Below, in pieces: positions 865-61,684 of a stretch of 64,000 nt of DNA. Positions within the stretch are counted from its first letter, which is position 1; each line of letters starts with the position of its first letter. Where the stretch lies: positions 372,001 through 436,000 of IMG/VR virus record IMGVR_UViG_3300036715_004471; one strand, 5' to 3'. A model generated the notes under the pieces. That model was not told the DNA's origin, made no database searches, and saw nothing but the letters and a program-made list of their open reading frames with translations. The translations under genes were made by a program, and so were the position numbers.

Positions 865-2760
865 TTACTTCACCAAATCTAAGAAGTCTTCTTCTGAAAG
901 AAGGATTGTACCTAACTTACGAGCTGCCACCGCCTTAGAACTAGTACTGTTCGGATCTGCAATTACCAGATAACTTAAACCTTTACTAACTGAATTCTTT
1001 ACGTCTCCGCCAGCATCAGCCGCCATCTTTTCCAAAACAGGTCTTTTGGTTTTCATTGATCCTGTAAAACAAACTGATTTGCTAGTTAAAACGCCCTTGG
1101 CTCTGATTTTGATTTTAACACCATTATCTAGTAATTCCAAGATCAAATCTTGATTTGAAATCAAACCATTTGCCAAAGACTTGGCTTTTACCGGACCCAA
1201 ACCTGGAACTTGTTCAAATTCATCAGCTGATAGTTGTCCAAACTTCTCCAAACTATCACACCCAGCATTCATGATGAGTTTAATAGTGGACTGCCCAATC
1301 ATAGGGATACTTAAAGCTCCAAGGAAAACTTCCAAAGGAACTTCTGCGGCTTGCCACAAAATATCATGACATTTCTGAGCAGATTTCTTGCCCATACGAT
1401 CTATACTAGATAAATCATCGACAGTTAACTCGTATAAGTCAGAAACTTTAACTACCTTACCTGTCCGAACCAATTTCTCAACTAAAGTATCTCCCCACTC
1501 TAATAGGTTGAGTTCTTTAATCCAATTCTTGATTCTGCCCACCACTTGTGCCGAACAAGTTAAACTGTTGGTACAGTTAAGATTTTCTCCAACCATTTCT
1601 ACTAATCCTCCACACTCCGGGCAATTAGTTGGAGCCTGCAATATGGTACCGGTGCTTTTAATCAATTCTTCAACACGCGGAATAACATCATTTGCTCTTG
1701 AGACTAAAACTGTAGCCCCAATATCCAAGCCTAATTCCTGGACATAAGCTAAGTTATATAGACTTGCTCTACTAACAGATGCTCCAACTAAGATCACCGG
1801 ATCTACCGTAGCAACAGGAGTTAATCTTCCGCTATTACCAACCTGCCAAACAATATTTCTAATAACAGACTCTCTAGCCTCATTATCGAATTTGAAAGCA
1901 ATAGCTCCTTTAGGTCTTAAATCTTTATCTCCCAAAGCAGCTTGGATAGCCAGATCGTTCACTCTAACGACCAAACCATCAATATCATAGTCTAATTTAT
2001 CACGCTCAGTGTCTTGATATTGTCTCCAAAAATCGCTTACATATTTAGCGTCATTGAATAGCCAAATATTAGGGGTTTTTAAATTGTGAGATTTCAACCA
2101 AAGCCACTGATCGTGCTCAGAATCAAAATCTACATCTCCCAAAACTTGATAAAATAGAATATCAAGATATTCACTGCCCACACCATCCAGTCTCTTGGAG
2201 ACACCGGAGGCGGCATTTCTGGGATTTGCCTTATCAGCAAAATGGGCTTTATGATTGGTTTTGGTCATAATGATTTCGCCACGCAAAGAGCCAGTAAAAG
2301 GATCTGGCAAATTGTCACAAAAATCATACAATTCTCTCATTACTCCTCCCATGTTAATAACATTAGAAGTAATGTCTTCTCCAATAGTTCCGTCACCACG
2401 GGTAATAGCTTGAACCAATGAACCATATTCATAAATAAGTTCAATACTAAGTCCATCTAACTTTTCAATTACCCATAATTTTTCACCTGGAGCAGTGCTG
2501 TCGACCCATTTAGTCAACTCATCAGGAAGATTAACTTTATCCAAAGATCCCATAGGAATTTGGTGTTTAGCTTTTTTCCATTCTGTTAACGCAACTGGCG
2601 CGCCAACAGCAGTAACAGCAGCGTTTGTGGGATCTAGAATTTTAAGTTCATCAACCCATGCGTCATAAACCTTATCTGAAAAGGTTGATTGACCATTGTA
2701 ATAATCATTACGTGCTTTAGTAATTTTATCTGTTAATTCTTGAATACGTTGCTGTGACAT
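865..2760 (-). CDS. ligA: NAD-dependent DNA ligase
   Basis: KLDGLS adenylation motif, TRGDG, NPRNAASG, OB fold, C4 zinc finger, HhH, BRCT. Confidence 0.97.
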   Translation of the reverse strand: MSQQRIQELTDKITKARNDYYNGQSTFSDKVYDAWVDELKILDPTNAAVTAVGAPVALTEWKKAKHQIPMGSLDKVNLPDELTKWVDSTAPGEKLWVIEKLDGLSIELIYEYGSLVQAITRGDGTIGEDITSNVINMGGVMRELYDFCDNLPDPFTGSLRGEIIMTKTNHKAHFADKANPRNAASGVSKRLDGVGSEYLDILFYQVLGDVDFDSEHDQWLWLKSHNLKTPNIWLFNDAKYVSDFWRQYQDTERDKLDYDIDGLVVRVNDLAIQAALGDKDLRPKGAIAFKFDNEARESVIRNIVWQVGNSGRLTPVATVDPVILVGASVSRASLYNLAYVQELGLDIGATVLVSRANDVIPRVEELIKSTGTILQAPTNCPECGGLVEMVGENLNCTNSLTCSAQVVGRIKNWIKELNLLEWGDTLVEKLVRTGKVVKVSDLYELTVDDLSSIDRMGKKSAQKCHDILWQAAEVPLEVFLGALSIPMIGQSTIKLIMNAGCDSLEKFGQLSADEFEQVPGLGPVKAKSLANGLISNQDLILELLDNGVKIKIRAKGVLTSKSVCFTGSMKTKRPVLEKMAADAGGDVKNSVSKGLSYLVIADPNSTSSKAVAARKLGTILLSEEDFLDLVK

Positions 2761-12803: not shown

Positions 12804-14192
12804 TTATTTTGTACGTTCTCTGATTCTTTCCAGAGAATCATCAATCAGTAGTTCTCCATTTTCATAGACAGTCTTTAACGCCGAGAATTCGTTAGCATTC
12901 TCGCTATCGGACAAAGAAATTGTCTGCCAAATTCCGTTTGGCCATTTTACCAAATCTAATCTACCTGGTTTGGACTTTTTGCCGTGATCGGTGATTGGGT
13001 CTTTGAAGACTGGTCTGGTTTTACCATCGACCGTAATAGATGAACATTTCATGGCGAATTTAAGAGTATCTCTATTCAAACCCTGAATTAAAGCCCCGCC
13101 CATTCCAAATCCTACATTGGTGGCAGAATAGCCATAATTCAACAGATTTTCTAGAATTGCCCCAATAGAATGCTCATCAACACCATCGCCCTGAATAACC
13201 CTTACATTATTCAAGACTTTATATCCCTTTGTATTGGTAGTGCTACCAAACTTACTATCCAAAATCTGAACAGTTTTCAACACTACATCAGGGGGATTTC
13301 CGCTGTCTGGTCTAATAACCACTGTAGCGCCAGAATCAATTACTTCCTGTTTTAACTGCCCACCCCATAATTTCTCGCAGGCATTATACAAATCATAAGA
13401 GTCAGAAACACAAGCAACCATCGATCCGGGTTTCGCGAACTGGTTCAGCATATTTCTATAAGCTTCAGCTTCATTCTCTTTACCCCAACTGGTAATCGAA
13501 GAGTGTTCCGATGCAGGGATACTAAATCCTGACATAGGACAATTATAGTATTCGTTAGCGCAGAGAACTCCTGCTGCCGTATCTGAACCTAAGAAATTGA
13601 CTAAATGAGCAGCATCACCAATCATTGCTGATTCCTGACTGCTATTTCCTCTGGCTCCGAATCCATGCAGCTTGAAGTTAATCTCTGCGGCAGGATCATC
13701 AGATGACTTGTTCAAAGCATCAAGAATAATCTGTTTAATTGTATAGCTGCGTGTGGCTACTGTAATTGGATACCAAATCCTAAGTAACATAGTTTCTAGC
13801 CATGAAACAATCCAAAATACGTTTGGATCTGTGGATTCAATACTAACTAGAATGTTGTGACCCGAAACGACTGTTCCTTCCGGAACCGCACGAATTCTAA
13901 CAGGAAGTTTGCCGCCTAATTCTTTGGCAATATACATCCAGCCTTCATAGTTGAAAGGCTCTCCGTGAGCAGTCCAAAACTCTCTAGCTCTTTCTACTTC
14001 TTCTACGGTTACGCGATGCGATAGATACTCTTTCAGATAATACTGTAAGCCGAAAAATACTGTCTTATCATATTCTCCGCCACGACTTTCGATATAACTA
14101 AACATCGAAGTGGTCCCCGGCGGATACTGAAGATAATGCGAAACCTTGTATGAATCAGTATCAAAGAGATAGCTAAATCTAATTGTTTTCAT
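12804..14192 (-). CDS. nadV: nicotinamide phosphoribosyltransferase
   Basis: TDSYKVSH, SIPASEHS, VSDSYD, IRPDSG, IQGDG, RDTLKFAMK. Confidence 0.95.
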   Translation of the reverse strand: MKTIRFSYLFDTDSYKVSHYLQYPPGTTSMFSYIESRGGEYDKTVFFGLQYYLKEYLSHRVTVEEVERAREFWTAHGEPFNYEGWMYIAKELGGKLPVRIRAVPEGTVVSGHNILVSIESTDPNVFWIVSWLETMLLRIWYPITVATRSYTIKQIILDALNKSSDDPAAEINFKLHGFGARGNSSQESAMIGDAAHLVNFLGSDTAAGVLCANEYYNCPMSGFSIPASEHSSITSWGKENEAEAYRNMLNQFAKPGSMVACVSDSYDLYNACEKLWGGQLKQEVIDSGATVVIRPDSGNPPDVVLKTVQILDSKFGSTTNTKGYKVLNNVRVIQGDGVDEHSIGAILENLLNYGYSATNVGFGMGGALIQGLNRDTLKFAMKCSSITVDGKTRPVFKDPITDHGKKSKPGRLDLVKWPNGIWQTISLSDSENANEFSALKTVYENGELLIDDSLERIRERTK

Positions 14193-16386: not shown

Positions 16387-17541
16387 TTAGTATTCACTAT
16401 CTTCTTCATCTTGGGCGTCATAAGCATCAGGTTTTTCATGAACAACTACTTCATGTTTTCTAGATTCTGGATTCCAGCCATGTTCTCTAGCAACAGAATA
16501 GATTTCTGCCAATGTAAACGGCTTATCTTCCTCAATTGAAAAGATAGTATCAGCCACATTAGCAAGACCAGGAACCAATTTGTTGAATATAAATTGTGAT
16601 TTGGAAGCGCTCAATGCTCCAACCTTGATATCTTTGCTTAATCTGCCGGGGCGCATGATTGCGGCTTCCATTTCCAATTTCTGAGCGTTGGTTGTGGCAA
16701 TAATACGTAAATCCAACATCGAACCAAGAATACCATCTCCCAAATTCAACAAAGATTGAATTGAGTTAATATTCTCATTACCCCTAGTTACCAATACTTT
16801 ATCAGCATCTTCTAAGACCAAAATGATTGGTCCGGATGCATGATGCCTATTATCAATCAATAGCGGTAACAGTTCTGGTCCACCCAATGAAGAAACCATC
16901 TCTGGTGGAACCAAAACGAACATAGCATCTGGAACCTCCAAAAGCATCGCTCTTACTAAATGGGTCTTACCAGTACCGGGCTCACCTTCCATGATTACGA
17001 TTCTTCCAGAAGGTTGATTGGAATTCAAATCTTTGATAACGAAATCATAATCTTTGATAACTTCATCACTGTAATTATCTCTAACTAATCGTATGCTTGC
17101 GTTACCCAATGAGCTAAGAGAAAGATTACCATATTGTTTGGTAATTGCGAAGACATGCCCTTTTTTCTTCTCTGGAACAATTAAAGGAGCAACAAAATCT
17201 CTAATTGTTTCAACTAGTTTTTGATCCTTTGAGGCGGCAGCAACAGTTACATAGGAACCAGACAAACCATATTCCGCCATGCCGTCCTTCCAAATCCAAA
17301 CCAAAGATTCCGGTTTACCAATGAAATTATAGACAAGTCTTCCACCAAGAGCCGTCATTTTTGCCTTAATGGATTCCAGATTATCTGAATCTACATTTCC
17401 GTAAATGTAACACTCAGATATATGCCCACTATCGTTTTCCAACACATTTCTCAGAAGTGTAGACATGCCCAAAGCATTGACGCTAATTTCTGGTTTGCGA
17501 CCAAGTTCAATCCAATTCATACCATTTCTCCAGATACTCAT
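16387..17541 (-). CDS. AAA+ ATPase
   Basis: GEPGTGKT, LVLEDAD, ATTN, RPGRL. Confidence 0.92.
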   Translation of the reverse strand: MSIWRNGMNWIELGRKPEISVNALGMSTLLRNVLENDSGHISECYIYGNVDSDNLESIKAKMTALGGRLVYNFIGKPESLVWIWKDGMAEYGLSGSYVTVAAASKDQKLVETIRDFVAPLIVPEKKKGHVFAITKQYGNLSLSSLGNASIRLVRDNYSDEVIKDYDFVIKDLNSNQPSGRIVIMEGEPGTGKTHLVRAMLLEVPDAMFVLVPPEMVSSLGGPELLPLLIDNRHHASGPIILVLEDADKVLVTRGNENINSIQSLLNLGDGILGSMLDLRIIATTNAQKLEMEAAIMRPGRLSKDIKVGALSASKSQFIFNKLVPGLANVADTIFSIEEDKPFTLAEIYSVAREHGWNPESRKHEVVVHEKPDAYDAQDEEDSEY

Positions 17542-21499: not shown

Positions 21500-21856
21500 T
21501 TAGTTGATTGATACCACTACTGCGGCACCAACATCTGATACGTGGGAGGCTCTATTATCCGTTAGATAACGAGATAATGTTTCCACCGGATTCTCTGGTA
21601 GAGGATTCTCTACAATGAATTTTTCTGCTAACTCTCTCAAAGCTACAGTTAAGTCCGGATTATGAACCGAACAAACTACTTCCTTCTCACCAGAAACCCA
21701 ACGAACAATAGAAACGTAATACGTTTCACGTGCGCGAGATAACCAAGCAACAGTTAGTCCTGGCGCAGTACCATCAGATTGGTACGCGAAGTTAATAGCC
21801 TTGGTGATCTTATCAATTAACGTTTGTGTGTCCATTTTACTTATCTCTCCATTCAA
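21500..21856 (-). CDS. hypothetical protein
   Basis: ORF coupled to tsf. Confidence 0.55.
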   Translation of the reverse strand: MNGEISKMDTQTLIDKITKAINFAYQSDGTAPGLTVAWLSRARETYYVSIVRWVSGEKEVVCSVHNPDLTVALRELAEKFIVENPLPENPVETLSRYLTDNRASHVSDVGAAVVVSIN

Positions 21857-22841
21857 AATTTGAATTATTTAAAACGCCTTTTTCAAAATTTGGATCTGGC
21901 GTAGCAGGAACACCTGACAACTTAGCAACTTCATCAGAGAAATTGCCTTTAGTTTGCTGTTCTATTCCTTCACCAACTTGACAACGAATGAAATTCACAA
22001 TCTCAATCTTGCCACCTAATTGAGCTGCATATTGTGTGTCAATAAGTTGCTCTATACTTTTCTTAGGAACCACTACTGATTCCTGTTTAGTCAAACAAAC
22101 CTCAGTATACCATTTATTAAGCTTGCCTTCAATAATTCTAGCCCATTGTACTTGAGGTTTTCCAAGCCCTTCTACTTGAGCTTGAAAAATATCTTTTTGT
22201 CGATTAAGCACATCTTCTGGTAACTTATCTGGTGATATTGCTATCGGATTCATTGCCACAATTTGCATTGCTAAATCGTAACCAATTTGTGCAAATGCTT
22301 CTGAATTAGCAATTTCTACAGATGGAGCTTTCAATGTAACTATTGAAGCTAGTTTATCAGCAGGATGATGTACATATCCAAACACGCGACACGTGTCGTC
22401 GATGGGCTCCTCGATCCACCAACGATTGAATACGCATTTTTCTTTAACTTTAGCAGACAATTCTGTTTGTGCCGTAAGCGCCTCACCATTTGTTAATTTA
22501 TCGAATGGTAATCCCACCACATGAACTGCGGCAATACTAAACCACACTTCTTCCGCGAACCCTCTAAATTCCGGGCTTCTAGCTACAAAATCAGTTTCAC
22601 AATTTACTTCTAACATCAAAACAGCTTTACTACCAACTGGTAATTGTACAGGTCCCGCCAATACAATACCTTCAGCGGCGATTTTACCCTCTCTACCAGA
22701 AACAATATTCTGTCCCTTGGTTTTGATAATATCAACGGCTTTTTGTAGATCATCGCCCGCCTCTTTCAAAGCATCATTACAATCTTTCATACCAGCTTGG
22801 GTAAGGGCGCGTAATTCTTTTAATAATTCTGATTTATTCAT
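21837..22841 (-). CDS. tsf: translation elongation factor Ts
   Basis: LRALTQAGMKDC..AL, AAEG, EVNCETDFVAR, AMQIVAMNP. Confidence 0.95.
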   Translation of the reverse strand: MNKSELLKELRALTQAGMKDCNDALKEAGDDLQKAVDIIKTKGQNIVSGREGKIAAEGIVLAGPVQLPVGSKAVLMLEVNCETDFVARSPEFRGFAEEVWFSIAAVHVVGLPFDKLTNGEALTAQTELSAKVKEKCVFNRWWIEEPIDDTCRVFGYVHHPADKLASIVTLKAPSVEIANSEAFAQIGYDLAMQIVAMNPIAISPDKLPEDVLNRQKDIFQAQVEGLGKPQVQWARIIEGKLNKWYTEVCLTKQESVVVPKKSIEQLIDTQYAAQLGGKIEIVNFIRCQVGEGIEQQTKGNFSDEVAKLSGVPATPDPNFEKGVLNNSNFEWRDK

Positions 22842-39690: not shown

Positions 39691-40042
39691 TGGAAGAGTT
39701 ATTCTATAATCCGGGTTCTGTTATTTCAAACAATCATTAATCTTGGCGAATAGTCACCTATTCGCTCCAGCACCAACCCGTAAACATCGGGCGAGTAACC
39801 CTCAAACGTTTACTATTTGGCTTGCTTCAAATGGGGTTTGCCGTGCCATGTTTGTTACCAAACATGCGGTGGGCTCTTACTCCACCATTTCACCCTTACC
39901 GGAAGCCGAAGCTTCTTAGGCGGTATCTTTCTGTTGCACTTTCCGTCGTGTCACCACGCCCAGCCGTTAACTGGCATTCTACTCTACGAAGCCCAGAATT
40001 TCCTCAGTCTTGCGACCGCGATTGCTCAAACAACTCTTTCCA
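39691..40042 (-). ncRNA. rnpB: RNase P RNA, bacterial type A
   Basis: GAGGAAATTCTGGG, GGAAAGTGCAACAGAAA, GGTAAGGGTGAAA, GGCAAACCCC, ACAGAACCCGGATTA; P1 closes the ends. Confidence 0.93.
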
Positions 40043-47487: not shown

Positions 47488-47633
47488 TGAAACAACAAGA
47501 ATTGGAAAGACTATTTTTCGCGTGTTACCATTACACCACACTGCAATGTTTAATTTCTTGGTTGCAGTGGAGGGAATCGGACCCCCTTCTCGTTCTTATA
47601 ATGAAATGTAATCCTTCACAGGCATTTGTTTCA
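47488..47633 (-). ncRNA. Y-RNA-like (YrlA-type) RNA 1 with permuted tRNA domain
   Basis: TGAAACAA/TTGTTTCA closing stem; AATGC..GAAGGATTACAT; T-arm, CACTGCA-ACCA-loop-TGCAGTG, D-arm. Confidence 0.8.
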
Positions 47634-48185: not shown

Positions 48186-48935
48186 ATGTTTCAACTATTT
48201 ACACAAGAGCAATTACAAACTTCCAGATCAAATGATTTGTTACCATTAAAATGTCAACAATGCTCTAAAACATTTTTAATATCTAAAAAGTACATAACAC
48301 AAGTTCTCAATGGTAAATCTAGCCGAGGGTATAAACTACATTTTTGTAGTTCTAAATGTTCACAATTGTCAAGAACTACTTCTGAAATTTTTTCATGCAC
48401 TTTTTGTGATAATCCATTAAAAATGAAATTATCACAAAAACAAAGATCAAAATCTGGAAATATTTTTTGTTCTAAATCGTGCGCAGCTAAATATAATAAC
48501 ACTCATAAAACTAAAGGTAGCAGGCGTTCTAAACTTGAAATTTGGTTAGAGCAACAACTTTTATCATCTTACCAACAATTAAAAATACAATTCAATTGCA
48601 AAGAAACTATCAATTCTGAATTAGATATTTATATTCCAAGTTTAAAATTAGCATTTGAGTTAAATGGCATCTTTCATTATGAGCCAATTTATGGTTCAGA
48701 AAAATTGGCTTCCATTCAAAATAATGATAACAGGAAATTTCAAGCCTGTTTAGAACAAGACATTGAGCTTGTTATTATAGATACGTCATCTCAAAAATAT
48801 TTTAAAGAAAAAACATCACAAAAATATCTTAAAATTATAAAAGATATAATTGATAATAAACTAAATTACTGGTCGTCCCCCCGAGATTCGAACTCGGCAC
48901 CTCTGCCTTATCAGAGCAGCGTTCTAACCAAATGA
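48186..48935 (+). CDS. zinc-finger plus PD-(D/E)xK/Vsr-like endonuclease
   Basis: FCS..C repeats; ELDIYIP..LAFELNG.FHY; D..K...C; 3' end antisense to tRNA-Ile. Confidence 0.8.
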   Translation: MFQLFTQEQLQTSRSNDLLPLKCQQCSKTFLISKKYITQVLNGKSSRGYKLHFCSSKCSQLSRTTSEIFSCTFCDNPLKMKLSQKQRSKSGNIFCSKSCAAKYNNTHKTKGSRRSKLEIWLEQQLLSSYQQLKIQFNCKETINSELDIYIPSLKLAFELNGIFHYEPIYGSEKLASIQNNDNRKFQACLEQDIELVIIDTSSQKYFKEKTSQKYLKIIKDIIDNKLNYWSSPRDSNSAPLPYQSSVLTK

Positions 48936-48946
48936 ACTAGAGGACG
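48870..48946 (-). tRNA. tRNA-Ile(GAT)
   Basis: CTGCT-CTGATAA-GGCAG; ACCA. Confidence 0.92.
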
Positions 48947-48951
48947 GTTAT

Positions 48952-49045
48952 TGTGGATACACAGGGAATCGAACCCTACGCTAGCCTGCTTTCGACTCCT
49001 TTCTACCCACCTTGGTAGGTGGACAATGGCGGGCTCTCTATACCC
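48952..49045 (-). ncRNA. D-armless tRNA-like RNA with Ala identity elements
   Basis: GGGTATA/TGTATCC-A (G3-U70); T-arm TAGGG-TTCGATT-CCCTG. Confidence 0.65.
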
Positions 49046-49049
49046 AAGT

Positions 49050-49127
49050 TGGTGGACACATTGGGAGTCGAACCCAATTTTTCCCGACAATTGTCCGAGC
49101 TTTTCATAGGGACGGGTTACTGTGCCC
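49050..49127 (-). ncRNA. D-armless tRNA-like RNA with Ala identity elements
   Basis: GGGCACA/TGTGTCC-ACCA (G3-U70); T-arm TTGGG-TTCGACT-CCCAA. Confidence 0.7.
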
Positions 49128-49334
49128 AAAATCTTAAACACTAAAAATGAGTACGATATCTTCTCCGCCTTCCTTAATAAAAGCATCATAACTCATACTA
49201 CACGGAGCGTTGAACCAAACATAATTGTTATTATCAATAGTCCATGTCAACTTTCTATCAGGATTAAATCTAACTTCTTTATCATCTTCCATGATATAAG
49301 TGCCAAATTTGTCCATCTTGATCTGTCTTTTCAT

Positions 49335-49410
49335 TGGTGGTACCTAACAGGATCGAACTGTTTTCGTCCGCTTTTCAGACGGCGGTCTTGACCACAAATA
49401 CGAAGGTACC
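49335..49410 (-). tRNA. tRNA-Phe(GAA)
   Basis: Loop CTGAAAA; ACCA. Confidence 0.82.
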
Positions 49411-49419
49411 ATATTTGTC

Positions 49420-49494
49420 TGGTGGCTCCTGTTGGTATCGCGCCAACATTTCCTGCTCTTCAGGCAGGCGCTAATCTATTTCAGCTAAGGAGCC
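49420..49494 (-). tRNA. tRNA-Phe(GAA)
   Basis: CCTGC-CTGAAGA-GCAGG; unusual T-loop CGCGATA. Confidence 0.8.
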
Positions 49495-49499
49495 ATGTT

Positions 49500-49574
49500 G
49501 TAGTTTAATAAGGGCTCGAACCTTAATATATTTTTGTATATCGTTTCCACGAGTACTCATAAACATTAAACTAC
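49500..49574 (-). ncRNA. tRNA-like RNA, T-arm on a 9-bp terminal stem
   Basis: GTAGTTTAA/TTAAACTAC; TAAGG-TTCGAGC-CCTTA. Confidence 0.55.
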
Positions 49575-52189: not shown

Positions 52190-52197
52190 ATTCTTAA

Positions 52198-52345
52198 AGA
52201 CAACAAAAATTGAAAGTTATCACGCCTTTCGGCTTCAACGCGTTTGCCTTTTCGCCACCACCAACAGTAAGTCGATGGGAGGGACTCGAACCCTCAAACC
52301 TTTTCAGATATTGATTTTAATATGTAAACCTTCTGACATTTGTCT
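52198..52345 (-). ncRNA. Y-RNA-like RNA 4 with permuted tRNA domain
   Basis: AGACAAATGTCAGAAGGTTTACAT; GAGGG-TTCGAGT-CCCTC; CCATCGAC/GTTGGTGG; D-arm; CAATTTTTGTTGTCT. Confidence 0.8.
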
Positions 52346-52354
52346 AGAAGAAGC

Positions 52355-52430
52355 TGGTCGAGCATATTGGATTTGAACCACCCTACATCGCCCCAAACGA
52401 CGTGTGCAACCAGGCTACACTTTATGCTCG
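52355..52430 (-). tRNA. tRNA-Pro(TGG), imperfect T-stem
   Basis: CGTCG-TTTGGGG-CGATG; ACCA. Confidence 0.75.
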
Positions 52431-52777
52431 ATTAATTTTTCTTCATAATGCTCTATTCTGTGGCAATTTGCACACAGAACTTTACATTTAGAAATCTCAT
52501 TCATAATCTTTTCTTTAGACTTACCACTTTGTACTAGATTAGTTACTTCTGTAAGTTTTTGTGTTGGATCTATGTGATGGAAATCTAAAACTCTCCAATC
52601 ACTAATCTCACATTTGAGTAACTTCCTATACTCTATAAACCATTCTCTTTTTTCTTTACGAATACGATATTTCGTGGCTTTATCTTTTTTCTTATAATCT
52701 TCTCTGTGCTTATTGTTTTCATACCATTGTCTCCAATAAGCTCGTCTTTCTTCAACGCTGTTAAATTTCTTAGCCAT
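52415..52777 (-). CDS. HNH endonuclease
   Basis: VLDFHHIDP...EISKCKVLCANCHR; stop inside tRNA-Pro. Confidence 0.82.
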   Translation of the reverse strand: MAKKFNSVEERRAYWRQWYENNKHREDYKKKDKATKYRIRKEKREWFIEYRKLLKCEISDWRVLDFHHIDPTQKLTEVTNLVQSGKSKEKIMNEISKCKVLCANCHRIEHYEEKLIEHKV

Positions 52778-53429: not shown

Positions 53430-53870
53430 TTATCTACCCAATCTCCACCAACCAAAATCTTTAGCAGTTTTTCTTCTGTGACAATTTGCGCATCTAACAA
53501 CACATTTAGATATTTCTAAAGCTATTTTATCTAAGGATGCGCAATCATTAATCATACTGGAAATGCTGCATTCTTTATTTTCAAGATGATCAAAATCCAA
53601 AACAATCAAATCTTTTTCACCACAATCCACACAACCATTTTTTAGATGTGAAACAATAAAATCTTGTATTAAAGGCTTTAATGTTTCTTTTCTATTATAA
53701 ATACGTTGTTTTACTTTTTCAGTATTAAGTAAGTAATGTTTCTTACCATTTTCTAAATTGCACAACTTACAAAGATTTTGTCTTCCATCTTTAGATAATT
53801 TCTTTTTGTTAAAATCATCTAGCGATTTTTTATCTTTACAGATTGTACAAACTTTGAATTCTTCACTCAT
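53430..53870 (-). CDS. HNH endonuclease
   Basis: CVDCGE...LDFDH...EISKCVVRCANCHR. Confidence 0.88.
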   Translation of the reverse strand: MSEEFKVCTICKDKKSLDDFNKKKLSKDGRQNLCKLCNLENGKKHYLLNTEKVKQRIYNRKETLKPLIQDFIVSHLKNGCVDCGEKDLIVLDFDHLENKECSISSMINDCASLDKIALEISKCVVRCANCHRRKTAKDFGWWRLGR

Positions 53871-54230: not shown

Positions 54231-54326
54231 ATAATATTTAAAAAAGTACTTCATGAACACCCGCAATTTATAACTGCTCAGTTTGTAACAAGATATCCTT
54301 GTTCACCACACCTTTTTTAAATACAG

Positions 54327-54394
54327 CAGGATGGGAGGGAATCGAACCCTCTTCCAGAGGGTTGGAGGCTCTGTTGCGCCCTGCACTCCATCCT
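54327..54394 (-). tRNA. tRNA-Trp(CCA), short D-arm, no CCA
   Basis: CAGAG-CCTCCAACC-CTCTG; A1-U72, G73. Confidence 0.7.
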
Positions 54395-59734: not shown

Positions 59735-61297
59735 TCAGATTTGAACAGACTCAATGGTTGAGACCCATAGGTCTTTGTTGTTACCAAGTTCAAGGAACTT
59801 TGCAATTACATCAAAAACTTGATCACTAAAACCACCTACGTTAAGGATATTCTCCTTATCGTAAGCTTGAGTAGAGGTATTCGGAGTAAGATCAATACAA
59901 ACAAGCTTTGCTTTCTTGTTACGAGCTTTGAACTCAGTCCAAGCTTTCATCGTAGCGGTACCACGACTTCTGCCTGAATCAACCCAAGACTCGTTATCGC
60001 TTACATAAATGACTAGATCGCCCATGGCTTTTCTACGATTCAACTCTTCCATTGGAAGCGAACAGTTAGTGCCACCTCCGCCAAATCCTGCTAGGATCTT
60101 GGCGTTAGTCATAATTGAATCCATTGGATTCAGCTTATGAGCATGAACTCTAGTATCGAATGGTAATACTTCTACATCAGAATTTCTGCGCATAATAGCT
60201 GCGGCAACCAGGGCTGCCACATCAATACAACGCATCTTGCTGGATACATTTCCACGATTTCCGGTGACCGGAGAATTCATGGATCCAGAAGTATCTACCA
60301 TTACATAAACCTTTTTGTTTTCAAACTCTGGAATGTTCTCCAACGCATGCTCAGCAGCCTTTTGCAAAGCTACAGAAACCTTAGCAGGAACACTTGCATC
60401 CATATTCAAAAACGTAGTGAACAACTGGTACGGGAATACCTTTGCTCTCTTAACTTGCTCCTTATCCTCCAACTTGGCACAGATAAGCCCTAACAGATCA
60501 CGATCTGCTAACACATTATGACGAGCAAATGTGTTAAGGTTCTGTCTAATCTGGTTCCAAGTTGCATTGACTGCAATCTTTTTCCAGTGTTCAGCAGTCA
60601 ATGGTAAAGCCGTAAGCTTTTGGAAAGGTACATGCGGGATTTCTTTTGACATATCTTTCTTGAAGTCTTCAAACTGCTTAACTAGAGCACACAAGTCTTC
60701 CTTTGCATACTCCTTATCTAGCAAGTACCCAAATATAGCAGAACGTTGCTTATTGGTTGGCTTCGGATGAACCAACTTGATGATATCTTGCAATGACGGA
60801 TCATTACCAACATCTGCCGCAAACAACTGCTCATCATTCAAAGATTCCAAATACTTTTGGATTAATCTTTTAGGGCGAGTACCTAAAGACTTACGTCCAG
60901 TAGCCCCTGAACGAATAACCTGCACGAAATTTCTCAACATCTTTGGAGAATCAACTACCTTATCAAAGATTTTGGACAAAAGCTCGGAGTCCTTTCCAGC
61001 AACTACCGCAGCCAAAACCGCAGGCATATCTTTCATTAAACCCTCTTGACGAGAGTATACTGCCAAGCGAGCAACGTACTCAGCCGGCAACTTGTTAGCT
61101 AACTCTAACACTTTCTTAAGTTGATCTTCATCAGATACATAATATGTTCCGTTAAAACAACCAGTCATAGCTAATTGAGCCAATGCGGCTTTGTCAGACA
61201 AACTATAAGCTTGTCCACCAGCATTGTTAACTACATTGGTCGGCTTTACAGCCTTTGAAGACACAAACTTGCTAGCAAATAATTTCTTTGATGACAT
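59735..61297 (-). CDS. rsr: Ro60/TROVE RNA-binding protein with vWA domain
   Basis: NNAGGQAY, LAQLAMTG, GRKSLG, VHPKP, VFPYQL, VDTSGSM, GGTNCSLP, SDNESW. Confidence 0.93.
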   Translation of the reverse strand: MSSKKLFASKFVSSKAVKPTNVVNNAGGQAYSLSDKAALAQLAMTGCFNGTYYVSDEDQLKKVLELANKLPAEYVARLAVYSRQEGLMKDMPAVLAAVVAGKDSELLSKIFDKVVDSPKMLRNFVQVIRSGATGRKSLGTRPKRLIQKYLESLNDEQLFAADVGNDPSLQDIIKLVHPKPTNKQRSAIFGYLLDKEYAKEDLCALVKQFEDFKKDMSKEIPHVPFQKLTALPLTAEHWKKIAVNATWNQIRQNLNTFARHNVLADRDLLGLICAKLEDKEQVKRAKVFPYQLFTTFLNMDASVPAKVSVALQKAAEHALENIPEFENKKVYVMVDTSGSMNSPVTGNRGNVSSKMRCIDVAALVAAAIMRRNSDVEVLPFDTRVHAHKLNPMDSIMTNAKILAGFGGGGTNCSLPMEELNRRKAMGDLVIYVSDNESWVDSGRSRGTATMKAWTEFKARNKKAKLVCIDLTPNTSTQAYDKENILNVGGFSDQVFDVIAKFLELGNNKDLWVSTIESVQI

Positions 61298-61684
61298 ATG
61301 AATAACTCCTTTTGAACAAAAGTTTCAGGAAATAATAACCAGGATGGTTGAAGATTACAATTCACCAACATCAAGTTTACTATTTATTCTGGAGAATTTT
61401 TAATGAAAATAGCTTTCCCCTCGCTATCTCGAATCTACTATATAACCGTCTTAATTTATCTTTTCAATTTTCTAAATAAAAATATTTTCAATCTCGTAAA
61501 ACTTTAGAATGTGATCCACATGGACATTCTAATACAATTTTATCTTCCTGTACCTTTTCTATATCGATGTGCTCGTCGAACTCAACGCTTACTATCATCT
61601 GACAATCTTCGCAACGAAACAAAAATTTTCTTAATTCCTTCATATCAATATATGTTTTATATGCATTATGTGATATGATTTATC

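What the first reader, a model, noticed from the sequence alone, without database searches (positions are those of the whole stretch)
48952..49127. Tandem D-armless RNAs with alanine identity elements
Seen: two adjacent RNAs have a 7-bp GGG acceptor stem with G3-U70, A73 (one with CCA, one CAA) and a canonical T-arm. The D and anticodon arms are replaced by a 3-4 nt linker and an irregular helix. Known: G3-U70 is the AlaRS determinant, and the tmRNA tRNA-like domain also lacks a D-stem and anticodon. Inference: chargeable non-decoding RNAs, which could be mini ribosome-rescue RNAs, alanine donors, or EF-Tu/toxin decoys.
Basis: partly seen in the sequence, partly recalled or inferred. Interest (0 to 1): 0.75.

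Follow-up and report, generated by a model that had tools for sequence, protein, structure and literature searches.

The report
Two alanine-type tRNA mimics in phage
A 447-kb phage carries, inside its large tRNA gene array, two adjacent tRNA-shaped RNAs that cannot read codons but keep every acceptor-stem mark of alanine tRNA and also carry a motif typical of Ro60-binding Y RNAs, so they are probably chargeable tRNA mimics and not decoders or ribosome-rescue RNAs.

Summary
On the minus strand, RNA1 (49127-49050, 78 nt) and RNA2 (49045-48951, 95 nt) each have a 7-bp GGG acceptor stem with G3·U70, A73, CCA or CAA, and a canonical T arm. Neither has a D arm or a usable anticodon loop, and ARAGORN and the Rfam tRNA model miss both.

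G3·U70 is otherwise confined to tRNA-Ala: 3 of 3 tRNA-Ala against 0 of 35 other tRNAs in the window, and 31/35 against 12/816 across all fetched loci. The two RNAs are paralogues.

- **RNA2** is conserved in four phage lineages (95% mean identity, 96.8% to L003). That is higher than the neighbouring tRNA-Ile (89.6%), and one helix shows compensating changes.
- **RNA1** evolves fast but keeps its helices through compensatory changes.

They are not tmRNA-like. They lack the D-loop analogue, the P2 helix and a tag frame, and the genome has no SmpB.

Both carry a YrlA-type motif (GUCGAAAG, GACAAUUG) ending 10 nt before the T arm. The same array encodes Ro60 and two YrlA-like RNAs.

Best reading: these are tRNA-Ala-derived, probably alanylatable tRNA mimics, possibly Ro60 partners. 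Charging, expression and binding are untested.

The parts
49050..49127 (-). RNA1, 78 nt: alanine-type tRNA mimic. Acceptor 49127-49121 with 49060-49054, T arm 49077-49061, A73 49053, CCA 49052-49050.
   Evidence: Sequence. No ARAGORN or Rfam tRNA call. Second-best hit of the RNA2 model R1 at 37.8 bits, above every tRNA. Homologue L003:7528-7608(-) at 74% identity, with compensatory changes 7:66 A:U>U:A and T stem U:A>C:G.
49086..49095 (-). RNA1 motif GACAAUUGUC; the core GACAAUUG ends 10 nt before the T arm.
   Evidence: 9 of 10 identical to the conserved 5' motif GACAAAUGUC of the YrlA-like RNA at 52196-52344. L003 RNA1 has GUCGAUUGCC in the same register.
48951..49045 (-). RNA2, 95 nt: alanine-type tRNA mimic. 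Acceptor 49045-49039 with 48961-48955, helix H2 49035-49029 with 48989-48983, hairpin H3 49023-49006, T arm 48978-48962, A73 48954, CAA 48953-48951.
   Evidence: Four lineages (window/L004, L003, L005, L130), 95% mean identity, 97% of cells paired. Pair 15:59 is C.A twice, U:A once and C:G once. 96.8% identical to L003, against 89.6% for the adjacent tRNA-Ile.
48989..49005 (-). Near-invariant single strand UAG-AAGG-N-GUCGAAAG of RNA2 (columns 41-57); the GUCGAAAG motif is 48996-48989.
   Evidence: 15 of the 17 columns are invariant in alignment A2; columns 44 and 49 vary. GUCGAAAG fits the YrlA motif GNCGAAN0-1G proposed as the Rsr/Ro60 contact (PMC4201824).
48870..48946 (-). tRNA-Ile(GAU), immediately downstream and syntenic with RNA2 in L003, L005 and L130.
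49134..49334 (-). 66-aa ORF of unknown function; its stop lies 6 nt before RNA1.
   Evidence: 82% and 76% amino-acid identity in L003 and L005.
59735..61297 (-). Ro60/Rsr homologue (TROVE plus vWA domains), 10.7 kb upstream on the same strand.
   Evidence: Pfam PF25045 at 1.1e-18 and PF05731 at 1.7e-07. 48% identical to the Myxococcus phage Mx1 protein.
52196..52344 (-). YrlA-type Y RNA candidate Yl-1 (context, not part of the pair).
   Evidence: Full-length Rfam YrlA alignment at 15.9 bits. Conserved in L010 (95%) and L040 (72%), with 8 of 41 pairs showing compensatory double changes.
47488..47630 (-). Second YrlA-type candidate, Yl-2 (context).
   Evidence: 40.3 bits, E about 5e-7 with model R2, full length.
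39691..40037 (-). Phage-encoded RNase P RNA (class A), the expected 5'-maturation ribozyme for the array.
   Evidence: Rfam RF00010, 288.2 bits.

Best explanation
RNA1 and RNA2 are a tandem pair of paralogous, tRNA-Ala-derived tRNA mimics that no longer decode. They sit in the phage's tRNA array with no promoter or terminator of their own. They are therefore most likely co-transcribed with the tRNAs, cut at U-1/G+1 by RNase P (the phage encodes its own RNase P RNA), and finished to CCA. CCA is encoded in RNA1; RNA2 would get it from a CCA-adding enzyme, and the phage encodes one of that family. Both keep the acceptor/T-arm minihelix with G1:C72, G2:C71, G3.U70 and A73. That is the part of tRNA-Ala which AlaRS needs, so host AlaRS should charge them with alanine. 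Where the D and anticodon arms would be, they carry a helix-bounded loop. Exactly 10 nt before the T arm, that loop ends in GUCGAAAG (RNA2) or GACAAUUG (RNA1). This is the motif proposed to contact Ro60 in bacterial YrlA Y RNAs, and it is also present at the 5' end of two YrlA-type RNAs in the same array. My preferred mechanism: they are Ro60-binding, Y-RNA-like tRNA mimics in ordinary tRNA topology. Their CCA or alanylated end would stabilise them or link the particle to tRNA-binding factors. Shown: existence, tRNA-like ends, the alanine identity set and its specificity, paralogy, strong purifying selection on RNA2, the motif, and the Ro60/YrlA context. Inferred: transcription, processing, alanylation and Ro60 binding.
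For: Structure far above chance. G3.U70 with A73 is restricted to tRNA-Ala: 3 of 3 Ala against 0 of 35 others in the window, and 31/35 against 12/816 in all loci. After RNA1, model R1's next-best hits in the genome are the phage tRNA-Ala genes, so the ends are tRNA-Ala-like. RNA2 is 96.8% identical to L003 and 89% identical in a contig with unrelated flanks (L130). That is higher than the adjacent tRNA-Ile, and two independent changes repair the 15:59 mismatch. RNA1 helices are kept by compensatory changes. Position 3:70 is G.U, G.U, G.U, G.U, A.C or U.U in homologues and never Watson-Crick. Mispairs at 3:70 can support alanine acceptance in vivo (PMC9976931). The phage encodes RNase P RNA and a CCA-adding-family enzyme. 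There is no own promoter or terminator. The array encodes Ro60. GNCGAAN0-1G is the YrlA motif, and M. smegmatis YrlA is cut by RNase P and receives CCA (PMC4201824). RNA2 and Ro60 co-occur in both contigs long enough to tell, G000 and G003. YrlA-type RNAs lie in the same array and in many Ro60 loci. An RNA with the RNA1 acceptor and G3.U70 lies 4.9 kb downstream of Ro60 in a 305-kb phage (L032).
Against: No expression data: the one 'RNA?' contig covering an RNA1 relative is inconclusive. The Rfam YrlA model does not hit either RNA. The motif sits next to a helix 3' strand and not at the RNA's 5' end as in YrlA, and there is no D arm. The motif evidence is partly post hoc: the chance of the literature motif appearing in RNA2 is about 0.03, and of the Yl motif in RNA1 about 0.01. 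Ro60 already has two canonical-type partners in the window. Other alanine-type orphans occur in 17 phage contigs without Ro60, though most are fragments. L003 has lost G3 in both RNAs, and G4:C69, a minor bacterial determinant, is absent. RNA1 is missing in L005 and L130, so it is dispensable. Folding energy of RNA1 is not better than shuffles (z = -0.4).
Confidence: 0.4

Rival explanations
1. Alanylatable tRNA mimics with a role unrelated to Ro60. They could be decoys that soak up host factors or defence nucleases and toxins acting on tRNA acceptor ends or EF-Tu. They could also be donors of activated alanine for a non-ribosomal transfer.
For: The complete alanine identity set and its conservation. 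Similar G3.U70 RNAs without a normal anticodon loop occur in phage contigs that show no Ro60: class B, L073 and L096-type. RNA1 evolves fast, as expected of a molecule in an arms race.
Against: No tRNA-dependent transferase or recognisable partner is encoded next to them; the neighbours have no informative domains. This reading does not explain the invariant 16-nt internal strand of RNA2 unless that strand is the decoy's binding site. No defence target is known.
Confidence: 0.2
2. TLD-only tmRNA analogues, like the RNA of mycobacteriophage DS6A, that titrate host SmpB and inhibit trans-translation.
For: The architecture is G3.U70/A73 acceptor plus T arm with no anticodon arm. DS6A carries a TLD-only gene, and such a molecule inhibits tmRNA, perhaps by titrating SmpB (PMC4131195). 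This phage has no tmRNA of its own, whereas relatives such as Mx1 and L037 do.
Against: DS6A's RNA scores 43.2 bits on Rfam tmRNA through its GGUCGAC D-loop analogue and P2 helix. RNA1 scores 17.1 bits through its ends only, and RNA2 does not score. The linker after the acceptor is 3-4 nt here, not about 14 nt. The acceptor and T arm resemble the phage tRNA-Ala, not the phage tmRNAs.
Confidence: 0.12
3. Decaying duplicates of tRNA-Ala, retained at most as RNase P/3'-processing signals that punctuate the polycistronic array transcript, with no function in trans.
For: The array holds several other degenerate tRNA-like elements, at 49498-49572 and 54324-54394. RNA1 is absent from L005 and L130, is only 74% identical in L003, and folds no better than shuffles.
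Against: RNA2, including its non-tRNA insert, is more conserved than the neighbouring tRNA. It survives in a contig with different flanking genes. Processing signals would not need G3.U70 or an invariant internal strand. RNA1's helices are maintained by compensatory changes.
Confidence: 0.12
4. Miniature ribosome-rescue RNAs that enter stalled ribosomes like tmRNA.
For: Only the alanine-type acceptor/T-arm module.
Against: No resume codon or tag frame was detected by ARAGORN. No SmpB is encoded. TLD-specific elements are missing. Without a message to switch to, alanine transfer would not release the ribosome.
Confidence: 0.03

Closest known systems
YrlA Y RNAs (Rfam RF02553), especially M. smegmatis YrlA, which is cut by RNase P and receives CCA
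   Same: A tRNA mimic with a canonical T arm and an acceptor-like stem. It has a GNCGAAN0-1G-type motif, is encoded near and on the strand of a Ro60 gene, and is handled by tRNA-processing enzymes (PMC4201824).
   Different: In YrlA the RNA ends form the Ro60-binding stem, the acceptor stem is a closed hairpin, the order is T arm - acceptor - D arm, and a D arm is present. Here the ends form an open 7-bp acceptor stem with CCA, there is no D arm, and the motif lies 10 nt before the T arm. The Rfam YrlA model does not match. The pair lies 10.7 kb from Ro60, not within 4 kb.
tmRNA tRNA-like domain and the TLD-only gene of mycobacteriophage DS6A
   Same: G3.U70, A73, a T arm, no anticodon arm, phage-encoded, expected to be a substrate of AlaRS and RNase P.
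   Different: There is no GGNUUCGAC D-loop analogue, no P2a helix and no tag frame. Rfam tmRNA gives 17 bits or nothing, against 43 bits for DS6A.
Phage T4 species 1 RNA (rnaC), a stable RNA of the T4 tRNA cluster
   Same: A non-tRNA stable RNA encoded inside a phage tRNA cluster, with a T arm (CCGGG-UUCGAAU-CCCGG) and an acceptor-like terminal stem. It stands in tandem with a second odd RNA (rnaD), and its function is unknown.
   Different: It is 139 nt long, has no G3.U70 and no encoded CCA, and has an unrelated interior.
tRNA-Ala and synthetic alanine minihelices
   Same: A73, G2:C71 and G3.U70 on a 12-bp acceptor/T-arm stack, which is the part sufficient for AlaRS recognition (PMC9976931). 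The ends are most similar to the phage's own tRNA-Ala.
   Different: No anticodon UGC/GGC, no D arm with G20, and C4:G69 or U4:A69 in place of G4:C69. The interior is conserved and unrelated to tRNA.

Membership tests
canonical tRNA (RF00005) | Cloverleaf with a D arm and a 7-nt anticodon loop carrying U33; detected by tRNA models | tested here: not met
   No ARAGORN call. No Rfam tRNA hit at E<=10. The RNA1 loop ACAAUUG has C at position 33, and RNA2 has no 7-nt loop hairpin.
AlaRS substrates (alanine identity) | G3.U70 wobble pair | tested here: met
   Present in both window RNAs, in RNA2 of L005 and L130, and in the L032 RNA. L003 has A.C and U.U instead.
AlaRS substrates (alanine identity) | A73, G2:C71 (plus G1:C72) and a 3' CCA | tested here: met
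   Both have A73, G1:C72 and G2:C71. CCA is encoded in RNA1. RNA2 has CAA in the window and L003 but CCA in L005 and L130. A CCA-adding-family enzyme is encoded.
AlaRS substrates (alanine identity) | G4:C69 and G20 (minor bacterial determinants) | tested here: not met
   C4:G69 in RNA1 and U4:A69 in RNA2; there is no D loop (determinant list from PMC9976931).
AlaRS substrates (alanine identity) | Actual alanylation | not testable with these tools
   Needs an in vitro charging or acid-gel assay.
tmRNA / TLD-only tmRNA (RF00023) | D-loop analogue GGNUUCGAC directly after the acceptor stem, and helix P2a | tested here: not met
   RNA1 scores 17.1 bits from its ends only, and RNA2 has no hit. The DS6A control scores 43.2 bits including these elements.
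tmRNA / TLD-only tmRNA (RF00023) | Resume codon and tag reading frame | tested here: not met
   ARAGORN finds no tmRNA in the window or the genome.
tmRNA / TLD-only tmRNA (RF00023) | SmpB partner | tested here: not met
   No PF01668 match in the 446.5-kb genome, while the control rang in 12 of 14 genomes. Binding to host SmpB is not testable here.
YrlA / Y RNA (RF02553) | Ro60 (TROVE) gene nearby on the same strand | tested here: met
   Ro60 lies at 59735-61297(-), 10.7 kb upstream, which is farther than the usual 4 kb. The distance is 7.5 kb in G003.
YrlA / Y RNA (RF02553) | GNCGAAN0-1G motif | tested here: met
   RNA2 has GUCGAAAG, invariant in 4 lineages. RNA1 has only the variant GACAAUUG (GUCGAUUG in L003), which matches the local Yl motif GACAAAUG.
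YrlA / Y RNA (RF02553) | Terminal stem formed by the RNA ends, order T arm - acceptor hairpin - D arm, and a match to the family model | tested here: not met
   The ends form an open acceptor stem and there is no D arm. No YrlA hit at E<=10 on 48800-49450, whereas 52194-52346 aligns full-length.
YrlA / Y RNA (RF02553) | Binding to Ro60 | not testable with these tools
   The complex-prediction job with Ro60 and RNA2 was not folded.

The most novel reading that the evidence does not exclude
RNA1 and RNA2 are one-piece, aminoacylatable Y RNAs. A Ro60-binding module sits where the D and anticodon arms of a tRNA-Ala would be, giving a Ro60 particle with a live, alanine-charged CCA end. They would be a living intermediate between tRNA-Ala and the permuted YrlA family, and would connect Ro60 RNA surveillance to aminoacylation or EF-Tu during infection by a huge phage.
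Probability: 0.2. Interest if true: 0.85.

Novelty: new variant of a known kind. Interest (0 to 1): 0.62.

Why it matters
Non-tRNA stable RNAs in phage tRNA clusters have been known since T4 species 1 and 2 RNAs, and they remain unexplained. Here a pair of such RNAs shows a clear molecular signature, and one of them (RNA2) is strongly conserved. That signature is the full acceptor-stem alanine code on a molecule that cannot decode, next to a Y-RNA-type motif, in a genome that also brings its own RNase P RNA, CCA-adding-type enzyme, EF-Ts, Ro60 and YrlA-like RNAs.

If they are charged, they would be natural alanine minihelices with a biological role. If they bind Ro60, they would show how Y RNAs could arise from tRNAs, and would give a simple system for asking what the tRNA-like half of a Y RNA is for. 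Either result is directly testable with transcripts of under 100 nt.

The survey also shows that G3·U70 RNAs without a normal anticodon loop recur in uncultured phages (class B, L032/L096, L073). Standard tRNA finders therefore overlook a class of phage RNAs.

Tried and rejected
- **L002:** I first took L002 for an RNA1 homologue. It has a CCUCG-UUUGCAU-CGAGG anticodon arm and belongs to a group of non-canonical phage tRNA-Ala(UGC) with a bulged acceptor stem. I dropped it.
- **Sequence searches:** Cultured phages (blastn) gave no relative of RNA1, RNA2 or class B. The RNA2 core pattern found only the same three IMG/VR contigs, one metagenome contig (L130) and no bacterial or archaeal genome. 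Model R1 found no further RNA2 homologues in 45 sources; the L032 RNA scores only at tRNA background level.
- **Expression:** No RNA run clearly holds the locus. A 161-nt contig in a run guessed to be RNA covers an RNA1 relative (93% identity) and ends at its CCA end. DNA carry-over cannot be excluded.
- **Complex prediction (Ro60 + RNA2):** the job was not folded and gave no verdict.
- **Two-piece or permuted tmRNA, or permuted YrlA across the RNA1/RNA2 junction:** cross-pairing of the RNA2 5' strand with the RNA1 3' strand works in the window. It fails in L003, and RNA1 is absent in L005 and L130, so I rejected this.
- **Coding reading:** the 92-aa ORF at 48911-49189(-) runs through tRNA-Ile and is not conserved, so it is spurious. 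A 6-codon frame ending in UAG inside RNA2 has no support.
- **Antisense target:** the RNA2 invariant strand has no complement of 12 nt or more in the genome. The one 11-mer is the 3' end of tRNA-Cys and does not covary.
- **Alternative RNA2 fold:** RNAalifold's alternative (12-18 with 35-41, and GUCGAA paired to the T loop) breaks the T arm. With the T arm kept, the 12-18/35-41 helix is 5 kcal/mol less stable than H2+H3.
- **Neighbouring proteins:** they gave no functional lead.

Full report
**Setting.** The window is bases 372001-436000 of a 446,541-bp IMG/VR virus record, recovered from a microbial-mat metagenome. Its minus strand carries 38 ARAGORN tRNA genes; the whole genome has 56 and no tmRNA. 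The window also holds a class A RNase P RNA at 288 bits, EF-Ts, a Ro60/TROVE protein, NAMPT and an NAD-dependent ligase. The genome has a CCA-adding-family nucleotidyltransferase but no SmpB and no AlaRS.

**The observation.** On the minus strand, RNA1 runs 49127 to 49050 and RNA2 runs 49045 to 48951.
- RNA1 reads GGGCACA-GUAA-[34 nt]-AAAAA-UUGGG-UUCGACU-CCCAA-UGUGUCC-A-CCA.
- RNA2 reads GGGUAUA-GAG-[54 nt]-AGCG-UAGGG-UUCGAUU-CCCUG-UGUAUCC-A-CAA.
- Both have G1:C72, G2:C71, G3.U70 and A73, with U at position -1.
- They are separated by ACUU, and tRNA-Ile(GAU) follows 4 nt after RNA2. This is the spacing used elsewhere in the array.

Neither RNA is called by ARAGORN or by the Rfam tRNA model, even at E<=10. 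RNA1 gets 17.1 bits on the tmRNA model, from the acceptor and T-arm ends only.

A simple acceptor-plus-T-arm scan finds 38 such structures in the window against 0.58 in random windows. It finds 4 of the alanine type against 0.01 expected.

**Alanine identity is specific, not incidental.** Of the 38 tRNAs in the window, only the three tRNA-Ala have G3.U70, each with A73. Bacterial alanine determinants are A73, G2:C71, G3.U70, G4:C69 and G20, and some mispairs at 3:70 still support activity in vivo (PMC9976931). RNA1 and RNA2 have the first three, lack G4:C69, and have no D loop.

**Homologues and selection.** Pattern scans of IMG/VR and JGI metagenomes gave three kinds of relatives:
- RNA2 in L004 (identical), L003, L005 and L130.
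- RNA1 only in L004 and L003.
- No RNA1 in L005, which has an unrelated 60-nt spacer, or in L130, where a protein gene abuts RNA2.

RNA2 has 95% mean identity. Against L003 it is 96.8% identical, compared with 89.6% for the adjacent tRNA-Ile, 74% for RNA1 and 82% (amino acids) for the upstream 66-aa ORF.

My RNA2 structure is acceptor 1-7/85-91, helix H2 11-17/57-63, hairpin H3 23-28/35-40 and T arm 68-72/80-84. It is 97% paired. Pair 15:59 is C.A in two lineages and is repaired independently to U:A and to C:G in the other two. With four near-identical sequences, no shuffle statistic is significant, so the argument rests on conservation more than on covariation.

RNA1 keeps its helices through compensatory changes: 7:66 A:U to U:A, and T stem U:A to C:G. 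At 3:70 it goes from G.U to A.C. RNA2 of the same phage (L003) has U.U. Thus 3:70 is never a Watson-Crick pair in any homologue, although the single-step changes to G:C or A:U would be the easiest ones.

A covariance model of RNA2 (R1) scores RNA1 at 37.8 bits, above every tRNA in 840 kb of phage sequence. The next hits in the genome are the phage tRNA-Ala genes at 27 bits. The two RNAs are therefore paralogues with tRNA-Ala-like ends.

**Not tmRNA.** The closest published precedent for a phage RNA of this shape is the 'TLD only' tmRNA gene of mycobacteriophage DS6A, thought to inhibit trans-translation by titrating SmpB (PMC4131195). I located it at L128:28478-28560. It scores 43.2 bits on Rfam tmRNA, including the GGUCGAC D-loop analogue and helix P2. 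RNA1 and RNA2 have a 3-4-nt linker there and lack both elements. Their acceptor stems differ from those of phage tmRNAs in related genomes. With no tag frame and no SmpB gene, a rescue function is very unlikely. A decoy function is possible but unsupported.

**The Ro60 / Y RNA context.** The ORF at 59735-61297(-) is a Ro60 homologue. Bacterial Ro60 partners of the YrlA type are tRNA mimics with a T arm and a conserved GNCGAAN0-1G motif thought to contact Ro60. M. smegmatis YrlA is even cut by RNase P and receives CCA (PMC4201824).

RNA2 contains GUCGAAAG. It is invariant in all four lineages, lies within a near-invariant 16-nt single strand, and ends 10 nt before the T arm.

Following a weak full-length Rfam YrlA hit, I found a conserved structured RNA at 52196-52344(-):
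- It is 95% identical in L010 and 72% in L040.
- Of its 41 predicted pairs, 8 show compensatory double changes.
- It has the YrlA order T arm - acceptor-like hairpin - D arm, and a bipartite terminal stem.

A model of this RNA (R2) finds a second copy at 47488-47630(-). It also finds full-length hits on the Ro60 strand in many Ro60-encoding phage loci, some directly after the Ro60 stop codon.

The conserved 5' motif of these RNAs is GACAAAUGUC or AACAAAUGCC. RNA1 has GACAAUUGUC (9 of 10) and L003 RNA1 has GUCGAUUGCC. The core of each again ends 10 nt before the T arm, in the register that R1 aligns to RNA2's motif.

RNA2 and Ro60 co-occur in both contigs long enough to tell (G000, G003). A 305-kb phage has an RNA with the RNA1 acceptor stem 4.9 kb downstream of its Ro60 and 0.6 kb from its YrlA-like RNA. 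Myxococcus phage Mx1 has the closest cultured Ro60 (48% identity). It has two unannotated tandem tRNA-shaped RNAs 3 kb upstream of Ro60, without G3.U70.

**Evidence against the Ro60 link.**
- The motif evidence is partly post hoc.
- The topology differs from YrlA, and the Rfam model does not match.
- Ro60 already has canonical-type partners in the window.
- Seventeen other phage contigs with G3.U70 or related orphans show no Ro60, though most are fragments.

**A wider class.** A scan for the 3' half of the acceptor/T arm found further G3.U70 RNAs that tRNA finders miss. 'Class B' (91-113 nt, nine contigs, GGGUACA...UGUAUCC-ACAA) has an invariant GGCCCC 6-nt loop and gets no Rfam hit. Others are L073 and L096 (the same RNA as in L032). 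T4's species 1 RNA likewise has a T arm and an acceptor-like terminal stem and lies inside the tRNA cluster beside a second odd RNA. The present pair is therefore a new variant within a long-known but unexplained kind of phage RNA.

**Mechanism and confidence.** I consider it very likely (about 0.8) that RNA2 is a functional, tRNA-like processed RNA; for RNA1 I put this somewhat lower. I consider it more likely than not (about 0.55) that the G3.U70 forms are alanylated. Ro60 binding I put at about 0.35-0.4. The combined preferred model gets 0.4.

No promoter or terminator of their own was found, which fits release from the array transcript by RNase P. Expression could not be shown: one 161-nt contig from a run guessed to be RNA covers an RNA1 relative and stops at its CCA end, but this is inconclusive.

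Noticed in passing
window 52196-52344 (-): Conserved structured RNA with YrlA architecture: bipartite terminal stem, then T arm, acceptor-like hairpin and D arm, plus a GCC-GAAA-GGC tetraloop hairpin. It lies between tRNA-Pro and tRNA-Lys, 7.4 kb downstream of Ro60. It has 8 compensatory pairs across 3 sequences. Rfam YrlA gives only 15.9 bits, so it would be missed at the gathering threshold.
   Followed up: yes
window 47488-47630 (-); also L032:15672-15822, L033:11842-11984 and three more copies, L028:4330-4457, L008:8257-8381: A second YrlA-like copy in the window, and full-length matches of my model R2 on the Ro60 strand in many Ro60-encoding huge-phage loci. Some start right after the Ro60 stop codon. 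This looks like a phage Y RNA family that current models detect poorly.
   Followed up: partly
window 39691-40037 (-): Complete bacterial class A RNase P RNA (288 bits) encoded by the phage next to its tRNA array.
   Followed up: no
window 59735-61297 (-) and 61405-61435 (-): Ro60/TROVE-vWA gene. About 150 nt upstream of its start is a hairpin with the loop GAGGGGAAA, conserved in L010, L019, L022 and L040. In L040, L022, L023 and L011 a short Y-like hairpin (for example AGCUCCUA-GCCGAAGG...) directly follows Ro60. The window and L010 have a plain terminator hairpin there instead.
   Followed up: partly
window 54324-54394 (-); L010:15198-15268; L020:8146-8216; L022:17875-17946: Conserved 67-72-nt tRNA-like RNA with a 3-bp D stem, almost no variable region and a 9-nt 'anticodon' loop (CCUCCAACC). 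ARAGORN does not call it.
   Followed up: no
window 49498-49572 (-) and 49335-49410 (-): An AU-rich tRNA-shaped element (AGUUUAA/UUAAACU, ends ACAA) lies between tRNA-Phe and tRNA-Ile(UAU). A second tRNA-Phe-like gene is seen only by Rfam (34 bits).
   Followed up: no
G000:15230-15303 and 320811-320884 (outside the window): Two tRNAs with anticodon CUA (amber suppressors), hinting at TAG read-through or recoding in part of the genome. I did not examine this.
   Followed up: no
L080:6286-6395 (+), L088:6213-6325, L103:10455-10545 and six more contigs: 'Class B' RNAs: G3.U70, A73, CAA end, a large D-like loop with GGAAGGUGGAAA, a covarying 7-bp hairpin with the invariant loop GGCCCC that could pair with an upstream GGGG (pseudoknot), and an optional extra hairpin. 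No Rfam hit and no relative in cultured phages.
   Followed up: partly
L008:16978-17066 and 17226-17314 (+), Myxococcus phage Mx1 OR576727: Two unannotated tandem tRNA-shaped RNAs (acceptor, two hairpins, long variable region, T arm; triloop in place of an anticodon loop) 3 kb upstream of Ro60 in a cultured phage. They offer a possible experimental handle.
   Followed up: partly
L057 (record G034), minus strand: the 76-nt GGGUCUU...AUGAUCC-ACCA RNA about 110 nt downstream of tRNA-Ala(GGC) (c[1688,1761]), and the RNA 4 nt after it: Another tandem alanine-type pair. The first is a D-armless G3.U70 RNA with a 7-bp stem and the loop ACUUUAGUG, which may hold a UUA anticodon (a possible ochre suppressor). 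It shares AUGAAAAGGCU with RNA1. A non-canonical tRNA-Ala(UGC)-like gene follows 4 nt later.
   Followed up: no
L026:603-682, L027:6099-6178, L071:6002-6082: tRNA-like genes with normal acceptor, D and T arms whose anticodon region is replaced by hairpins carrying AGUCCGAAA or GGCGAAAG. The first resembles the metazoan Y RNA motif GGUCCGA.
   Followed up: no
window 21837-22841 (-), 12804-14192 (-), 865-2760 (-); G000:260626-261018 (-): EF-Ts, NAMPT, an NAD-dependent DNA ligase and a CCA-adding-family nucleotidyltransferase are encoded by the phage. HNH homing endonucleases are scattered through the tRNA array (52415-52777, 53430-53870).
   Followed up: no
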